Shown here one piece after another: positions 44,901 to 53,300 of a DNA stretch of 64,000 bases. Under the pieces are notes generated by a model. The model saw nothing but the letters and a program-made list of their open reading frames with translations, had not been told where the DNA came from and searched no databases. How positions within the stretch are numbered: the stretch's first letter is position 1; the number at the start of each line of letters is the position of its first letter. Made by a program: the position numbers and the translations under genes. Source of the DNA: Trichoplax adhaerens (taxonomy: Eukaryota > Animalia > Placozoa); NCBI RefSeq assembly GCF_000150275.1, contig NW_002060954.1:620001-684000 (forward strand). Direction: 5' to 3'.

Positions 44901-46184
44901 TACCTCATATGTAATCAGAGCATTTAATGTACATTTACAATTTATAAGCACATATTAAAATTATATACTACAGTGGCATTAACGCGAATGCACACGTACA
45001 TAAATACTAATACTATTAACTCATCCATGTAATTATTAGAAGTATGGTAGGCCCAATGCAAAAACACAGTTGTATTATGATAGACGGAGTTTTTAACTAT
45101 TATAAAATATATAAGAATTTCTATAAAATGATTTCAACATAGTTTTCATGGGGATAATTTTTATACCTAATGATTCAATCGATATGCAAATAATCTACCT
45201 TACTATTTTATTGCTTTATGAATTGATGTCAAATGATTAATTATATAAGATTAACGTTATTTTACAACATATATTTACATCGTAGCATACGCATACCTTG
45301 TCTTCTTGTTTTTAGTAAAGCATCTAGTTCTAAAATAAGAGAGTAAATTTTCACAAGTGAGATTATATAAAGCGATTAGTTTTTTAAATATGCTAGCATA
45401 TATCCAGTAAGACTTTGCAATTTTATCTATCTTTAGAAGTCGAAGATATCAACCGCTAAAGGCTAACTGCTGTACTAATGAAATGTTGTTAAGCAATGAA
45501 GGTAATATTATCTCAACGTATTTACTTGAAATCGGCATTTAATATTGCTGAAGAATGTACCTGGTAGACTATGCTGGTACTGACTATTTTTAAGTTGATT
45601 AAAGTACGGCGTTAATGTCTTCATAACTTTAATAATACGTATTCTGGATTAATTAATATTAATTGTCACTGTAAATAATGCATTCACGAATATCAGAATT
45701 TTTATCATAAAATATTCAGTAAAATCAACAAGCAATCATAATGTTACAAATAATCAAAACTTGAATTCTTGTAGTAAAGTTCAGCTTGTGCTATCATATA
45801 TATCACCGATGTCTATATATCATACAGTAGAAAAACTAATGTTAAAGCGATTTATTCTCAATAGATCCAATATCAGCAAGTCACAAATTAAATTATTAAA
45901 TATCTATATTAATTTACGGTATGGCAAAAGTAAACTGGATTACTTGTTTGTTATTGAAGGAGCTGCGTTTAATGTGTAAGAGTGACAATGCAATACGTGT
46001 ATTCGTAAAATCTAGTTATAATCAGCTAAATAAGTAATTAACTAGTTAGTAACATTTTAAGTATATCCAAAGCTTGATAATGTTTCTGATCAACGTAACT
46101 ATACGTTTGTGACACGGTATTACATTAGAATCTCTATAGATTACTGTGATTTTGTTGCAAATGCCTATATTTGTCATAGCATAG

Positions 46185-49100
46185 CTAAACTATTTCAACG
46201 TATACCTACTGTTAAGACATAGAATTATCGATTTATTAACTGTGTAATGAGGAAATAAGTGTATAATTATGAAATTTGAACGGACCTTCATCATGTTTCT
46301 TATTCCAAATGTAAGGATGGCTATCTGCTTAAATGGAATGTTTACTAGTTATTCAATCTAGTTAATAATATACTATACTCATATCGCGATAGGTATACCA
46401 CAATTATAAATGATTTTTTGATTAATTCTGTCTGTATTTGCTACAAATAGAAATGAAAGATTCTCTACTTCGATAAAGTACTGTATGTATCATTTATTCT
46501 ATCTACTTGAAGCATTATGTTGAAATTAGTATATAATCACAAATTCCAACAGACTTTGTCTACGCTTATTCCAGAGTAAAAATTTAAGAGGGAGTGATGC
46601 AGCTATTTCGACGAAATATACACTAATTATTTAATCTAACCATAATATAATCTTTAAACAAATATATTGTAAGGGAATCTTAACGGACCTTCTTGACGCT
46701 TATTCCAAGGTACATCGACCAAAACACCTATTTTGATTGAATATACGATAATTTTTCGATCTAATTAAATTACTATACGTTTTATGCTTATATATATAGA
46801 GATATATATAATTAGAAATCCTAACGGACCTTGTCGACGTTTATTCCAAGGTATATCGAGCAAAGCACCTGTTTTGATTAAATATTCGACAGTATTTCGA
46901 TCTAATTACATTACTGTGTTATTTTTATATATACGTATGCATAATAAGAAATCCTAACGGACCTTGTTGACGTTTATTCCAAGGTATATCGAGCAAAGCA
47001 CCTGTTTTGATTGAATATTCGACAGTATTTCGATCTAATTACATTACCGTGTTATTTTTATATATACATATGCATAATAAGAAATCCTAACGGACCTTGC
47101 TCACGTTTATTCCAAGGTATATCGATCAAAGCACCTAGTTTAATTGAATTTACGATAGTATTTCGATCTAATTACATTACTATACAGTATTATGTTTATA
47201 TATATGCATAATAAGAAATCCTAACGGACCTTGCTCACGCTTATTCCAAGGTATATCGACCAAACCACCTATTTTGATTGAATACACGATAGTATTTCGA
47301 TCTAATTACATTACTATACAGTATTATGTTTATATATATGCATAATAAGAAATTCTAACGGACCTTGTTTACGCTTATTCCAAGGTACATCGACCAAAAC
47401 ACCTATTTTGATTGAATATACGATAGTATTTTGAACTAATTACATTGCTATCTTATATCGTCATATTTATATAAAGTAAGTACTAACGGACCTTGTTTAC
47501 GTTTATTCCAAGGTACATCGACTAAAACACCTATTTTGATTGAATATACGATAGTGTTTCGATCTAATTACATTACTATGTTATGTTTATATAATTCGAC
47601 GAAGGATACGCTAGTTATTTAATCTATGTATCACATAATGTTTATAATGAACATTTAATAAGGGAATTCTAAATGGACCTTGATTGCGCTTATTCCAAGG
47701 TAAATCGATAGGACTGGTACTCTCTGCTTCGATGAAATAACAATAGTTTTCGACGTAATTAATAACTATATTATGCTAAAATAGGTATAGCGATGAGATT
47801 CTAACGGACCTTCTAAACGCTTCTTATTTTCAACGAAATGGAAAGATTTCTTAGCTATATTGACGAATACGTTTTACGTACAATTAAACACTTCGTCATG
47901 AATTACATTACTATGTTATGTTTATATAATTCGATGAAGGACACGCTAGTTATTTAATCTATGTATCACATAATGTTTATAATGAACATTTAATAAGGGA
48001 ATTCTAAATGGACCTTGATTGCGCTTATTCCAAGGTAAATCGATAGGACTGGTACTCTCTGCTTCGATGAAATAACAATAGTTTTCGACGTAATTAATAA
48101 CTATATTATGCTAAAATAGGTATAGCGATGAGATTCTAACGGACCTTCTAAACGCTTCTTGTTTTCAACGAAATGGAAAGATTTCTTAGCTATATTGACG
48201 AATACGTTTTATGTACAATTAAATACCTCGTCATTAATAAGGATCGCTACCATTAACTCAGGTATTATTTTAATTATATGAGAATTGGTTGAGATTAGAT
48301 CCTGAATATAGAATAAATTTGCATCGTGATTACATATCGTGTAGTCAGCTTACGGACACAGAACTATGTTATTGTCGTTTTTGTAATCTGACTCTTATAT
48401 CTTTTATTATAGGTATACGTTGTGAGGGAATTTATCTAATTAGTGACAATCATCATTCATACTAATAACTCTTCCTCCAATCTTTTACTGAAATCTTAAC
48501 AAACGATTTCTGTAATCTAATAACATTTTCATAAATATTTCCTCGTGTCAAAGATAAAGTTATCGCGAACTAGCAAACTGCATATTTGAATGTTACTTGA
48601 AAGATAGATTAACTTTTAGATAGTAAGGAGATTTATTCTTCAATGCGATTTAGCCATTGATAGTAACATAAAATGATACGCAGGTCTAGAAACAATAAAT
48701 TTGTTAAAGAGGTTTATCATTTTCCTTTAACAGACAGTCTAATCAACGATTGGTAATTGATTTTGAGTAGAGCATGTTAAATGAATAAAATAAAAACGAA
48801 ATAGGAAACTGTAAAATAAAAACCTACAGCAATAGTTTCTTGGTGTATTGCTACTTATGTTTATCCGTATATTTATTCTTAAATAGTCATTGATTAGTTA
48901 TTTATTAATTGTAATATGAGATATTTCAAAAGGTTTATTTGACTATATTTATATCATTTTCTGTTTAATCGTAATAGTCATTCGTATATACTTTTATAAT
49001 GTACTTACCGCGTGCTACGTTGTCGCTCAAATCACGAAGGAATCCTGTTATTTAATAAAAAATTAGATTATCGAATGCATTGCACTTGAAAAGATTCAAG

Positions 49101-49435
49101 TACATTAATACGTTGTAAGATAAGAATGGCGCTGAATTAGTGTACAGATTTTTAGATGTTACTCACCGACTTTGGCTTTGAGACTTTCTACGACGTCTCG
49201 TTGCTCTGTTACCATAACAAGAAAGAACCAATAGAGAAGTTAATATTGTTGTTAAGTAATTTTATACTATTGTTGGTAGCTGACTATCGCAGTTACAGGT
49301 TATTCTTTGAACTCATAAAAAGTGCAGAAGGAAAATTGAAGCTACTTGTTCACTTTAATTACCTTCGATATGTCTGCAATCAACAAGGACACAGATCAAA
49401 GAGATAGCAATTAGAATGTTCAAGAATTTTGCCAT
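46185..49435 (-). CDS. PWN neuropeptide precursor (prohormone), ~250 aa, encoded by ~17 phase-1 micro-exons
   Basis: Signal exon 49435-49363 (MAKFLNILIAISLICVLVDC/RHIE). Then 49205-49167 EQRDVVESLKAKV; 49044-49009 GFLRDLSDNVAR; 48189-48145 and 47854-47810 AKKSFHFVENKKRLE; 48058-48014 and 47723-47679 ESTSPIDLPWNKRNQ; 47530-47492 and 47402-47364 GVLVDVPWNKRKQ; 47268-47230 GGLVDIPWNKREQ; 47134-47096 GALIDIPWNKREQ; 47001-46963 GALLDIPWNKRQQ; 46868-46830 GALLDIPWNKRRQ; 46727-46689 GVLVDVPWNKRQE; 46602-46555 AASLPLKFLLWNKRRQ; 46464-46399; 46324-46286 DSHPYIWNKKHDE; probable last exon 46189-46185 (V*). Every internal exon is AG/GT-bounded, a multiple of 3 and phase 1-1. EQGALLDIPWN matches the Trichoplax PWN peptide as recalled. 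Extra exons between 48190 and 49008 and the 3' end are uncertain. Confidence 0.88.
46270..48235. repeat. ~133-bp tandem array (exon+intron units of the PWN gene) including a near-identical 335-bp two-exon duplication
   Basis: The TAACGGACC anchor recurs at 46681, 46822, 46955, 47088, 47222, 47356, 47484, 47802 and 48137, with variants near 46279, 46547, 47670 and 48005. The block starting ~47566 is repeated at ~47901. Confidence 0.95.
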
Positions 49436-49555
49436 TTTCGTTTTATAGCTATGTAGATTGAAAGAGAAATATTTATCAATTAATTCTTTGGCTAATTAAT
49501 ATCTCAAAATAATTCTGAAATATAAGTTAGAAGGACACAATTACTTATAACGCAC

Positions 49556-49577
49556 ATATATATATATATATATATAT
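49556..49577. repeat. (TA)n microsatellite just upstream of the PWN signal exon
   Basis: Directly visible, ~11 units. Confidence 0.9.
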
Positions 49578-50375
49578 GATTGACCATATTATATGGTGTG
49601 TATTCAAATCGAAGCAGTAATTGTTGGTCTGATAAAAATAACGACATATCCTGGGCGTAAAAGGATTTTAATTAATATAAAGTATGTGAAAAACTATACT
49701 GGGTTATACTAAGATGCTGCAGATACCGGAATAAGAAAATTAGGGTATAAATAGAGACAAAAAATTAACAATTAGATGAATTATTGAATACAATTTAATA
49801 GACTGCTTCATTCTAATGTCATACTATGGATAAATGGGTGTATAACTAATACATAAAGTTTTTGATCTATTCTGGATTCAGCATGATTTATTTGGATGGT
49901 CTCGCTTTCATTCAAATGATAAGGTCTTATATATATAACATATACAAGATTTAACTTATAAAATGACTACTTAGGGCATATTGTAATTAGTAAGGAACTG
50001 AACCAATTATTAGACGATAATTTTTTAGAAGAATTTTATAACATCTATTGTGAAGAGTGTATTCCCTTTGATTTCAAGCCAAAGATTTTCAACATTAAAA
50101 ATTGATGCGAAGATAATTATAATAAGCATAGTCAATTTCACAAAATATAAACACATGAATTTAGATTGTTAATATGATTATTTGAATTCTATTGTAAGGC
50201 TTACATGAAAATAAATAGTGAATTGAGGTACGGTAAAAATTTAATTTAATATCCATAGTATTGTTCTACTTATCCTTTTTTTATATTAAACTTAACGACT
50301 AATTATAATTATCAAGCAATAGCGGTATCAGTACGTTTCAAAATAAGAATTATCAAAATGAGAACTATCATCTGT

Positions 50376-50388: not shown

Positions 50389-53300
50389 TTAAGGTCGTCA
50401 CAACAGCTATATCAGCTATGCATCATATACGTTAGGTATACTTACATAAGATATAGAGTAAAATCAATTCAACACGTATGTATGGTCTGTTTTGTTTGCA
50501 ATGATCGTGTTACAGTTCGTAATATAAATTTTGAGTTAAATTAAATACTGTTCTATACTGCAGTAAAATTAAGTTAATTATTACTGAATTAACCTTAAAT
50601 ATGCGATTTGATCATATTGATACGTCGCATCGATACTTAAGAACTATATTGATTTCTGGCTTTTGGAAGTTCATAGTGTTTTCTTAAATAGATATATGCA
50701 ATCATCGTATGCGTATTTCAAATTAATTGTAGTTACCGTGTGTTCTTGTGAAGAAATTCTCGTTACGTATTAAACTTCCTACAGATTCTATTCCGAAGCC
50801 TAGCAAGTATGATGCACTTGACCTTTATCCTTCAATACTCTGTACTTAATTATATCTCTAGTACTTTCCTAACTATCTGCTAATAAAAAGCATTCAATGG
50901 CTCAATAGGACTAATGAACCTTCATTTTATTGTATGACAATTAAATCCTTGTACATAGTGTATTTTTTAAATATTTCAATAGTAAAGTAGCATTTTAAGG
51001 AAAAGATAAAACAATTAAGCTATAATTTTTAGCCAAGCTAAAGTCGAATGTTTCATTGTTTCGTTTCTTAGAACTATCTAAGAACATTTCATACTACTTC
51101 GCTGATGTCACTAGTTATGAAAGCACTATCATGATTATAGCGTTGTTGTTAGCATCTGTTAGCCTATCGTTTGCCGAAGTTATGCAGTTCTGTAAGATTT
51201 AAGAATAGCAGTTTAAAGATTATTTTTTAAGGTGCAAGTACCCTAACAAGATGTTGAAATGAATCAAACTTATGGATACTTCGCTACACAAAATGCTTCG
51301 TTTCTTATTGCATGCTATTCTCTTCCATACTATAGGTATACGAGTGCATGACTGCAAGTACCGTAATTGCGTCTTTACCAACGTTATTTTAAAAATTGTA
51401 ACCAACTGATTAAATTCATATGTACTGATTCATGAAATAATTATAATATATCGCTATCGAATTAGGCACAAGAATCAAATAAAATTTTAAATATACACGT
51501 TATGATTTGACTCATAAATAATTGCATGTAGCAGTCAATTTGTTAGGATCTGTCAAAAAAATGACACATATTGAAATATTTGCTTCAATTCGCTTTCAGG
51601 ATGAAAGGATTCACACTTGCATCAAGCTAAATCATTATATACGAATGATTAAAAATATCTATCGGGCTTTTATTTAATCAAAACCATTCTAGCAACCATT
51701 TAACATAGTTAAATAATAAATTAATTTCTTAAGCAGCTATCGATTGTACTTTATAGTTGAAGCTTAACGACTAGATATTTTATTTCATTTATGATCAAAA
51801 TGAGATGATCGAAATAGAAAATATTGATGTGATGATAAGAAATAGAAAAGAAAGATAGTGCGCGTAGTACGGGTTTATTTCGGTGTTAAAAAACATGATT
51901 TAAGAGAAAGGCTTAATAAATAGAATTCTTACTTACAGTGATGTGATTTTCTATTAAAATTATTCCAGATGTGATAGTGGGAAAGTCGAGTCCAGAATTG
52001 AATAAACTTGCTGGAGAATCTACTTATATAGATAAATAAGATTAAGTTAATTAACATATTATGAAACCATAATGTCAACGCGTCATTAATCGGCCAACTG
52101 AATAGATACTGATGTTGCTTATGCTTGATAATCAGATCTTTTAATGAGACCTTATGGTAAAATATTAATTGGATCTGAAAGGTAATGATGACAGACAGTT
52201 TTTATTTCCGTTTCATTGATATCTATTGAGACAATAACTGCTTGGACTACATCTACATTGGTAATCAATTGAATTCAATGCTTTAGTCAATTAGTTTTAC
52301 TAATTATATTTTTCTTTACTATTTTTATATTTGAGTGACGTTCAAAATTTGAGAAAGAATAGTCTGAGTTACCTATATTTTTGGTTCTGTGGCAATAAAC
52401 GATCAAGACGAAATATCAATAAGTTATAATAATCATAAAGAATAGAAAAGGCTTCTAAATAATTGTTGGTATTGATAACAAGGATGTTCTTTGCTATCAT
52501 AATGATGAACAAGGTCATATTTAAGTGCCGTTAATGCTATTATTGCTAATTTTAACCACCTCACTATCGTTATAGGATCAAAGATTAGAATGAATATGAG
52601 TAGAAAACTATTAATAATACGAATAAACGACATCAAAGTGCAATTGATGAATAGCTAGAAATTAATATCAATATTGAACCTGTTTTGATCATCTCAACAT
52701 CCTGTTTTCCGCTCTCAACTATCACCATTCACAACTTATAACTATTATGATAAAATATTTACTTGTAGAATTGTAAACTTGGCTTACAGTTTTTCCTACA
52801 CAATTTCATTTTAATGCAGTTACCGTACCGTGTATTTAATTGCCTTCAGATCTTGTATCCTTTTTATTATTTGATTGTTTATATGTTTATTTTGACAGTG
52901 CAGCCAGATATAGCCTATGAAAAACGATGTTCAATCTTATTATCTTACAAAATTGTAAAAGCTATCCACCAAATTAATCATTAATATCAACTATACCCGT
53001 TCTTTCTGGGAAAGATTATTCATTGCTATGTAAAAAGTGAAATTAAAAGATGACTTGAATGATTCATACTAAAATTATAATTAATATTTAAACTTAATGA
53101 ATAATCTGATGTGCAAAAGAACGTAAATTAAGTTTCTCTATTCATTCCTTTATCATTTTTGCCTTATCAATCGATTATAATTAATGGGTTCCTTATATAA
53201 GGGATATGCCCTAATTTCAGCAGCATATGAAAGCAGCTGTATTTTTTATAATTTCTTAACATATAATTAACATAGTGTTCCGTAATCTCATTGACTTGAT

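What the first reader, a model, noticed from the sequence alone, without database searches (positions are those of the whole stretch)
46185..49435. The 'satellite' is a neuropeptide gene: one PWN peptide per 39-nt exon
Seen: each ~133-bp unit read on the minus strand is AG|39 nt|GTCCGT and encodes G-[AVG]-L-[LVI]-D-[IV]-PWN-KR-x-[QE]. Nine PWN-KR copies splice in frame to a signal-peptide exon at 49435-49363. Substitutions inside exons are synonymous or conservative (AAA/AAG Lys, TTG/TTA Leu, I/V). Established: prohormones carry repeated peptides flanked by dibasic KR sites, often within one long exon. EQGALLDIPWN is, from memory, a described Trichoplax peptide. Inference: peptide copy number here is expanded by duplicating whole exon+intron cassettes. 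This architecture is invisible to ORF finders and liable to be repeat-masked.
Basis: partly seen in the sequence, partly recalled or inferred. Interest (0 to 1): 0.92.

Follow-up and report, generated by a model that had tools for sequence, protein, structure and literature searches.

The report
Known Trichoplax PWN neuropeptide gene

Summary
On the minus strand there are seven ~133-bp cassettes, each with a 39-nt exon encoding G-x-L-x-D-[IV]-PWN-KR-x-[QE]. Two 335-bp cassettes each hold two 45-nt exons.

RNA contigs from three studies carry GT..AG joints exactly at these exon borders. Every internal coding exon is phase 1-1 and the frame stays open.

This is the PWN precursor. Varoqueaux 2018 tested EQGALLDIPWN. 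Najle 2023 lists the gene as TrH2_TrispH2_000337, with mass-spectrometry peptides that match my exon translations across three kinds of junction. It is the only such locus in the 105.6-Mb assembly.

- The gene runs from a 5'UTR exon ending at 51937 to at least exon 45329-45297.
- The "KRLE mini-exon" is a full 45-nt exon encoding the detected peptide SFHFVEN.
- The LWN exon is skipped, and the proposed last exon near 46200 is not used.
- The gene is not invisible to annotation.

The modest additions are whole exon+intron duplication and exon-skipped transcripts, one of which lacks every PWN exon. The scan noted this same stretch before (s1-756302). The gene is already known, so interest is low to moderate.

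The parts
51937..52000 (-). 5' untranslated exon. The donor CACT|GTAAGT at 51937 is established; the start near 52000 is inferred from a TATATAAG box near 52030.
   Evidence: The loose end at 49448 in runs X4 and X6 matches 51966-51937 exactly and uniquely. Sequence read.
49363..49448 (-). Exon E1: 13 nt of 5'UTR, ATG at 49435, 24 codons plus 1 nt. Encodes the signal peptide and RHIE.
   Evidence: Joint 49205/49363 in X4 and X6. Translation. The mass-spectrometry peptide [C].RHIEEQRDVVESL places the mature N-terminus after Cys20.
49167..49205 (-). Exon E2, 39 nt, phase 1-1, encodes EQRDVVESLKAKV.
   Evidence: Joints on both sides in X4 and X6. Mass-spectrometry peptides pQRDVVESLKAKVG and DVVESLKAKVGFLR.
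49009..49044 (-). Exon E3, 36 nt, phase 1-1, encodes GFLRDLSDNVAR. It is a branching point, joined to A1, to P2 or P7, and to T1.
   Evidence: Joints 48189/49009 (X4) and 47400/49007 (X4, X6); loose end at 49009 equal to the start of T1 (X4, X6).
48145..48189 (-). Exon A1, 45 nt, encodes AKKSFHFVENKKRLE. First exon of 335-bp cassette 1.
   Evidence: Joint 48189/49009. Translation. SFHFVEN peptide detected by mass spectrometry.
48014..48058 (-). Exon B1, 45 nt, encodes ESTSPIDLPWNKRNQ.
   Evidence: A-to-B joint seen in X6 and X10 (placed by the tool as 'goes back 249' because the two cassettes are nearly identical) and loose ends in X4. Translation.
47810..47854 (-). Exon A2, a copy of A1 with one synonymous difference.
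   Evidence: The mass-spectrometry peptide [N].pQAKKSFHFVEN.[K] requires a B-to-A junction, so both cassettes are translated.
47679..47723 (-). Exon B2, identical to B1.
   Evidence: Joint 47528/47677 in X4. Translation.
47492..47530 (-). Exon P1, encodes GVLVDVPWNKRKQ.
   Evidence: Joints. Translation.
47364..47402 (-). Exon P2, encodes GVLVDVPWNKRKQ.
   Evidence: Joint 47266/47362 in X4, X6 and X10. Translation.
47230..47268 (-). Exon P3, encodes GGLVDIPWNKREQ.
   Evidence: Joints 47266/47362 and 47132/47228 in three runs.
47096..47134 (-). Exon P4, encodes GALIDIPWNKREQ.
   Evidence: Joint 47132/47228 in three runs.
46963..47001 (-). Exon P5, encodes GALLDIPWNKRQQ. With the EQ of P4 it gives the published EQGALLDIPWN.
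   Evidence: High depth in the RNA runs. Its own joints are not resolved because P5 and P6 are 97% identical. Published peptide.
46830..46868 (-). Exon P6, encodes GALLDIPWNKRRQ.
   Evidence: Joint 46725/46828 in X4 and X10.
46689..46727 (-). Exon P7, encodes GVLVDVPWNKRQE.
   Evidence: Joints 46725/46828 and 46324/46689.
46555..46602 (-). Decayed cassette (48 nt, still open, AASLPLKFLLWNKRRQ) with the donor changed to AAA|GTCTGT. It is skipped in the RNA seen.
   Evidence: Joint 46324/46689 bypasses it (X4, X10), and the depth there is at intron level. Sequence.
46286..46324 (-). Exon IWN, 39 nt, encodes DSHPYIWNKKHDE.
   Evidence: Joint 46324/46689. Loose end at 46286 in X4, X6 and X10.
45297..45329 (-). 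Exon T1, encodes ELDALLKTRRQ. The acceptor at 45329 is shown. The 3' end is unresolved: either donor GTATGC at 45296, or read-through to a TAA 36 nt on, with AATAAA at 45212.
   Evidence: The loose ends at 46286 and 49009 match 45329-45302 uniquely. Sequence and reading.

Best explanation
This is the single-copy gene for the PWN prohormone of Trichoplax, transcribed from the minus strand.

Gene layout:
- A 5'UTR exon ends at 51937.
- It is spliced to a signal-peptide exon with the ATG at 49435.
- Two spacer exons follow.
- Then come 12 used peptide cassettes: A-B-A-B, P1 to P7, and IWN.
- Last comes at least one tail exon, beginning at 45329.

Every internal coding exon is 33-45 nt and phase 1-1.

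Processing:
- The product enters the secretory pathway, and the signal peptide is removed after Cys20. This step is shown by a published mass-spectrometry peptide.
- The product is then cut at KR, KKR, KK and RR sites, and the basic residues are trimmed. This step is inferred from the established prohormone convertase and carboxypeptidase pathway.
- The result would be nine PWN-ending peptides, one IWN peptide and two SFHFVEN peptides.

The N-terminal x-Q of each PWN peptide comes from the preceding exon, so each mature peptide straddles a junction. I infer that x is trimmed and Q is cyclised to pyroglutamate.

Copy number grew by unequal crossing-over of whole exon+intron cassettes. Because all exons are symmetric, skipping any of them keeps the frame, and such skipped transcripts exist.

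Applied PWN peptide makes the animal crinkle. The gene marks the 'delta' peptidergic cells at the body margin. Both points come from published work.
For: Splicing: GT..AG minus-strand joints lie at the predicted borders in X4, X6 and X10, which come from three studies. There are none in the DNA-like run X1.

Reading frame: it is open through 16 exons, all internal ones phase 1-1.

Identity:
- EQGALLDIPWN is the PWN peptide tested for behaviour.
- Najle 2023 Table S5 lists PWN_precursor TrH2_TrispH2_000337 in peptidergic_delta cells.
- Its mass-spectrometry peptides are RHIEEQRDVVESL (spans E1/E2), DVVESLKAKVGFLR (spans E2/E3), pQAKKSFHFVEN (spans B/A) and VDVPWNK. VDVPWNK has 4 hits in the propeptide, which equals P1, P2, P7 plus P3 with one mismatch.

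Single locus: the degenerate D[IV]PWNKR pattern hits only these 7 places in 105.6 Mb, and a DNA search of the genome finds only this array.

Cassette duplication:
- Introns are 82% identical overall and 95-97% in the pairs P3/P4 and P5/P6. The donor GTCCGTTA is shared by the A, P and IWN cassettes (B has GTCCATTT) and, decayed, by the dead LWN cassette.
- The 335-bp unit differs at 7 of 335 positions.

Marginal PWN+ cells.
Against: - Intact mature PWN peptides were not detected in the published peptidomics; only the fragment VDVPWNK was. The exact mature ends are therefore inferred.
- The joints P4-P5 and P5-P6 and the RNA joint B1-A2 were not individually resolved, because k-mer contigs collapse near-identical exons.
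- The 3' end beyond 45297 is not established.
- Within-array substitutions give no clear sign of purifying selection (pN/pS 0.63 from very few sites; third codon positions are as conserved as first and second).
- All RNA evidence is from assembled contigs, which cannot give isoform proportions.
Confidence: 0.95

Rival explanations
1. The exon-skipped transcripts (E3 joined to P2 or P7, E3 joined to T1) are splicing noise. It would be tolerated because every exon is symmetric and the GTCCGT donors are weak. On this view they are not a regulated way to change the peptide mixture. This rival concerns only the added claim, not the identity of the gene.
For: - The skipped joints have lower contig depth than the canonical one in the same run: 40.6 against 216.8 in X4.
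- The donors depart from the usual GTRAGT at positions +3 and +4.
- A rare joint from 46641 that runs into a stop codon also exists (X10, depth 7.5). This shows that some mis-splicing occurs.
Against: - The same two skipped forms recur in two independent studies (X4 and X6).
- They use exact exon borders.
- Contig depth is a poor measure of abundance.
Confidence: 0.6
2. The array is a non-coding satellite or minisatellite, and its open frame is accidental.
For: It has a tandem structure with AT-rich spacers and would be masked as a repeat.
Against: - Spliced RNA is present at high depth, with intron-level depth in between.
- Published peptides match the translation.
- GC content is 42% in exons against 25% in introns.
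Confidence: 0.01
3. The array is an untranscribed or decaying duplicate, and the real PWN mRNA comes from another locus.
For: One cassette (LWN, 46602-46555) is indeed out of use.
Against: - No other D[IV]PWNKR-coding site exists in the assembly.
- No other DNA match exists.
- RNA contigs lie on this locus at 99% identity or more.
Confidence: 0.01

Closest known systems
PWN precursor of Trichoplax (TrH2_TrispH2_000337, orthogroup OG_1925; Najle et al. 2023, PMC10580291; peptide from Varoqueaux et al. 2018, bioRxiv 10.1101/360925)
   Same: It is the same gene, or its ortholog in a near-identical strain. The published peptide and all the mass-spectrometry peptides I read for this precursor in Table S5 occur in my exon translations, apart from one 'Homolog'-class match that differs by one residue. 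The hit counts per propeptide fit the full array.
   Different: Nothing in kind. What I add:
- the exon-by-exon layout;
- the 5'UTR exon;
- the dead LWN cassette;
- the exon-skipped joints.

I found none of these discussed in the open-access texts I searched.
Xenopus laevis caerulein and magainin genes (tandem peptide-encoding exons; Roelants et al. 2013, PMC3731216)
   Same: - Several tandem-repeated exons each encode one peptide copy.
- The copies have diverged very little.
- Expansion is attributed to unequal crossing-over.
- Alternative splicing changes copy number.
   Different: - They are unrelated in sequence and lineage: vertebrate skin-defence peptides derived from cck.
- Here the peptide straddles the exon junction, and the exons are 39-45 nt, all in phase 1.
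Schistosome micro-exon genes (MEGs; bioRxiv 10.1101/2023.06.21.545858)
   Same: They encode secreted proteins built mostly from very short symmetric exons. That exon skipping gives protein variants in MEGs is from my own knowledge; I did not check it here.
   Different: - MEG introns are long, and the exons are not tandem copies of one cassette.
- The products are not dibasic-flanked repeated peptides.
- There is no homology.
SIFGamide precursor gene in the same genome (G000:C1401:696477-698303)
   Same: It is a multi-copy neuropeptide precursor of the same animal.
   Different: Its copies follow each other every 42 nt with no introns, which is the classical one-long-exon layout. The cassette layout of PWN is therefore not a general rule in this genome.

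Membership tests
Neuropeptide / prohormone precursor | N-terminal signal peptide | tested here: met
   There is a hydrophobic stretch FLNILIAISLICVLV after M-A-K. The published non-tryptic peptide [C].RHIEEQRDVVESL starts right after Cys20. SignalP was not available.
Neuropeptide / prohormone precursor | Repeated short peptides flanked by dibasic cleavage sites | tested here: met
   Nine PWN-KR copies, one IWN-KK copy, two SFHFVEN copies flanked by KK and KKR, and one RR site.
Neuropeptide / prohormone precursor | Processed peptides present in the animal | tested here: inconclusive
   From the literature only. pQAKKSFHFVEN, pQRDVVESLKAKVG and the fragment VDVPWNK were detected, but intact PWN peptides are listed only as 'previously described'.
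Neuropeptide / prohormone precursor | Expression in secretory (peptidergic) cells, and bioactivity of the peptide | not testable with these tools
   From the literature: peptidergic_delta cells, marginal PWN+ cells, and crinkling on application of 20 uM peptide.
PWN precursor gene (identity) | Encodes EQGALLDIPWN and is the only such locus | tested here: met
   The P4/P5 junction gives KR-EQGALLDIPWN-KR. The genome-wide pattern search hits only this array.
Tandem exon-duplication peptide genes (caerulein/magainin type) | Each repeat is a separate exon, with homologous introns between them | tested here: met
   Joints at every resolvable cassette border. Intron identity is 82% on average and up to 97%.
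Tandem exon-duplication peptide genes (caerulein/magainin type) | Symmetric exons, so that copy number can change in frame, with splice variants observed | tested here: met
   All internal exons are phase 1-1. Joints E3 to P2/P7 and E3 to T1 were seen in X4 and X6.
Schistosome-type micro-exon gene family | Homology to MEG proteins | not tested
   This is an analogy of layout only. The exons are too short for the protein search tools, and the joined product was not searched.

The most novel reading that the evidence does not exclude
The symmetric phase-1 cassette design may be put to use and not merely inherited. On this reading, peptidergic cells set the dose and mixture of peptides by skipping cassettes. 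Transcripts that join E3 directly to a late PWN exon, or to the tail exon with no PWN copy at all, do exist.

The true mature PWN peptides may also be pyroglutamyl decapeptides, pQG[AVG]L[LVI]D[IV]PWN. Their first residue would be supplied by the upstream exon. They would differ from the 11-residue E-Q form used so far in behaviour and docking work.
Probability: 0.2. Interest if true: 0.55.

Novelty: already known. Interest (0 to 1): 0.3.

Why it matters
Placozoans coordinate behaviour with secreted peptides and have no neurons. PWN is one of the best-studied of these peptides and serves as a cell-type marker.

This work gives an exon-accurate model of the gene, which shows three things:
- Each peptide is assembled across an exon junction.
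- A transcript without any PWN copy exists.
- One cassette is dead.

These points help with:
- probe and knock-down design;
- interpreting peptidomics;
- choosing the right synthetic peptide for receptor work.

As an evolutionary case, the locus shows copy number growing by exon+intron duplication. It sits in the same genome as the classical one-exon layout of SIFGamide. None of this changes what the gene is known to be.

Tried and rejected
- **Joined product not searched.** A script joined the exons only to track the reading frame and printed per-exon translations from window coordinates. The exons give 11-24 residues, below the useful length of the protein search tools, so no protein database search was run. 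Identity rests on published peptides.
I used a degenerate DNA pattern instead.
- **A possible second promoter or 5' exon** was suggested by short repeats 1472 bp apart. The alignment shows only scattered AT-rich matches, so I take it as chance.
- **The 3' end.** Beyond 45297 I could not decide between splicing and read-through.
- **Literature searches** for a description of the exon layout in placozoan neuropeptide genes found nothing. This covers open-access texts only; Nikitin 2015 was not readable.
- **The entry in table 5c** (47003 to 46696 with five letters between) could be a P3-to-P5 skip, or an arbitrary placement among near-identical exons. I left it unresolved.
Full report
**1. What is in the sequence**

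Read on the minus strand, the region holds two tandem arrays. One is a 134-bp unit x6.9 at 46676-47593. The other is a 335-bp unit x2.0 at 47566-48238. The core CCTTGGAATAARCG occurs nine times, all on the minus strand, against 0.03 expected from shuffles.

Each short unit has the form AG|39 nt|GTCCGTTA. Each 335-bp unit holds two 45-nt exons. A script that follows the frame from the ATG at 49435 finds 16 exons with no stop. Every internal exon has a length that is a multiple of three and sits in phase 1-1.

**2. RNA evidence**

One search found 22 runs, and I laid four of them on 45900-49700. X1 behaves like DNA: its depth is even and it has no joints.

X4, X6 and X10 come from three studies and carry joints whose skipped parts end CT..AC on the plus strand. 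That is GT..AG on the minus strand, exactly at the exon borders.

The joints seen were:
- E1-E2, E2-E3 and E3-A1.
- A-B, placed as 'goes back 249' because the two cassettes are almost identical.
- B-P1.
- P1-P2, which is ambiguous with P7 because the first 32 nt are the same.
- P2-P3, P3-P4, P6-P7 and P7-IWN.

Depth is at intron level between exons.

Two loose ends point outside the laid stretch:
- The one at 49448 matches 51966-51937 uniquely. This is a 5'UTR exon with donor GTAAGT, preceded by a TATATAAG box.
- The one at 46286 matches 45329-45302 uniquely. This is a further exon, T1, which follows a TTTTAG acceptor.

The cassette at 46602-46555 still has an open frame (LWN-KR). Its donor has changed to AAA|GTCTGT, and it is bypassed.

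**3. Identity**

EQGALLDIPWN is the 'PWN' peptide that makes Trichoplax crinkle. In the window it is formed by the EQ at the end of exon P4 and the GALLDIPWN of exon P5.

Najle et al. 2023 list the gene as PWN_precursor, TrH2_TrispH2_000337, orthogroup OG_1925. It is most strongly expressed in 'peptidergic_delta' cells.

Their mass-spectrometry peptides fit my exon translations and cross junctions:
- [C].RHIEEQRDVVESL spans E1/E2 and marks signal-peptide removal after Cys20.
- DVVESLKAKVGFLR spans E2/E3.
- [N].pQAKKSFHFVEN.[K] spans B/A, so both 335-bp cassettes are translated.
- VDVPWNK has four hits in the propeptide, which fits P1, P2 and P7, plus P3 with one mismatch.

PWN is also used as a marker of marginal peptidergic cells.

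The window lies in a 105.6-Mb assembly of 1414 contigs. From memory, that size matches the 2008 T. adhaerens assembly; I did not test this. A fully degenerate pattern for D-[IV]-P-W-N-K-R hits only the seven P exons, and a DNA search finds only this array. The refuting case of 'another locus' is therefore excluded.

The single exons are too short for the protein search tools.

**4. How the array arose**

Introns between the P exons are 82% identical on average, and 95-97% in the pairs P3/P4 and P5/P6. The 50 intron bases before each acceptor are 87% identical, and the exons are 88% identical. The two 335-bp units differ at 7 positions.

The donor context AAG|GTCCGTT recurs in the A, P and IWN cassettes and, decayed, in the dead LWN cassette; the B exons have GTCCATTT. 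The whole peptide region therefore descends from one exon+intron cassette that was multiplied and then diverged.

Third codon positions are as conserved as first and second positions (90% against 87%), and pN/pS is 0.63 from few sites. It is weak as evidence of selection; the case for function rests on the RNA and the peptides.

In the same genome the SIFGamide gene has its copies every 42 nt with no introns. The cassette layout is therefore specific to some genes. I did not check it.

**5. How it most likely works**

- Shown: transcription, the splicing pattern, signal-peptide removal, and the presence of SFHFVEN-type and N-terminal peptides.
- Taken from the literature: cell type and behavioural effect.
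- Inferred from the established prohormone pathway: cleavage at KR, KKR, KK and RR, followed by trimming of the basic residues.

One further inference concerns the N-terminus. The residue just before each G...PWN is always Q, and it is encoded by the preceding exon. The residue before that Q varies (N, K, E, Q, R). The same precursor yields pQAKKSFHFVEN with the preceding N removed, and many Trichoplax peptides start with pyroglutamate. The mature peptides may therefore be pyroglutamyl decapeptides.

**6. Exon skipping**

X4 and X6 both contain a contig joining E3 to an exon that starts like P2 or P7. Both also contain a contig joining E3 directly to T1, which leaves out every PWN copy. The joints lie at exact exon borders and involve the non-repeated exon E3, so template switching between repeats is unlikely.

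Whether these forms are regulated or noise cannot be told from contigs. I lean towards noise (0.6). The joints found here show that skipping happens.

**7. Comparison with what is known, and verdict**

The gene is already known and annotated. The layout has a clear precedent in the tandem peptide exons of the Xenopus caerulein and magainin genes. It also resembles schistosome micro-exon genes in form only.

I found no open-access text that describes the exon layout of this placozoan gene. The exon-accurate model, the dead cassette, the skipped forms and the pyroglutamate prediction are small additions. The implied novelty does not.

Noticed in passing
G000:C1401:696477-698303 (loci L006-L008): The SIFGamide precursor gene of the same genome has at least 37 copies of K-S-I-F-G-G-K coding sequence, mostly at a strict 42-nt spacing on one strand. 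This is a single long exon without introns and contrasts with the PWN layout.
   Followed up: partly
If so, peptide genes may be clustered here. I did not examine it.
   Followed up: no
window 46641-46688: There is a rare alternative donor (ATG|GTTAGA at 46641) joined to exon 46324 in run X10 at depth 7.5. It extends exon P7 into the intron and meets a TAA, so it is likely a splicing error.
   Followed up: partly
window 49545-49586: A (TA)n microsatellite lies in the first intron, about 100 nt upstream of the signal-peptide exon. Contigs of run X1 break there.
   Followed up: no
window 49199: Run X6 has a loose end (TGTTGGTTCTTTCTTGCTATGGT) that resembles the opposite strand of the adjacent intron. 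It may be a strand-switch artefact of library preparation and remains unexplained.
   Followed up: no
window 48021, 48161, 49389, 49431 and others: Single-base differences between runs fall in and around the exons. One example is 48021 G>A, a synonymous CGC to CGT change in exon B1, seen in run X1. These look like strain or allele variants.
   Followed up: no
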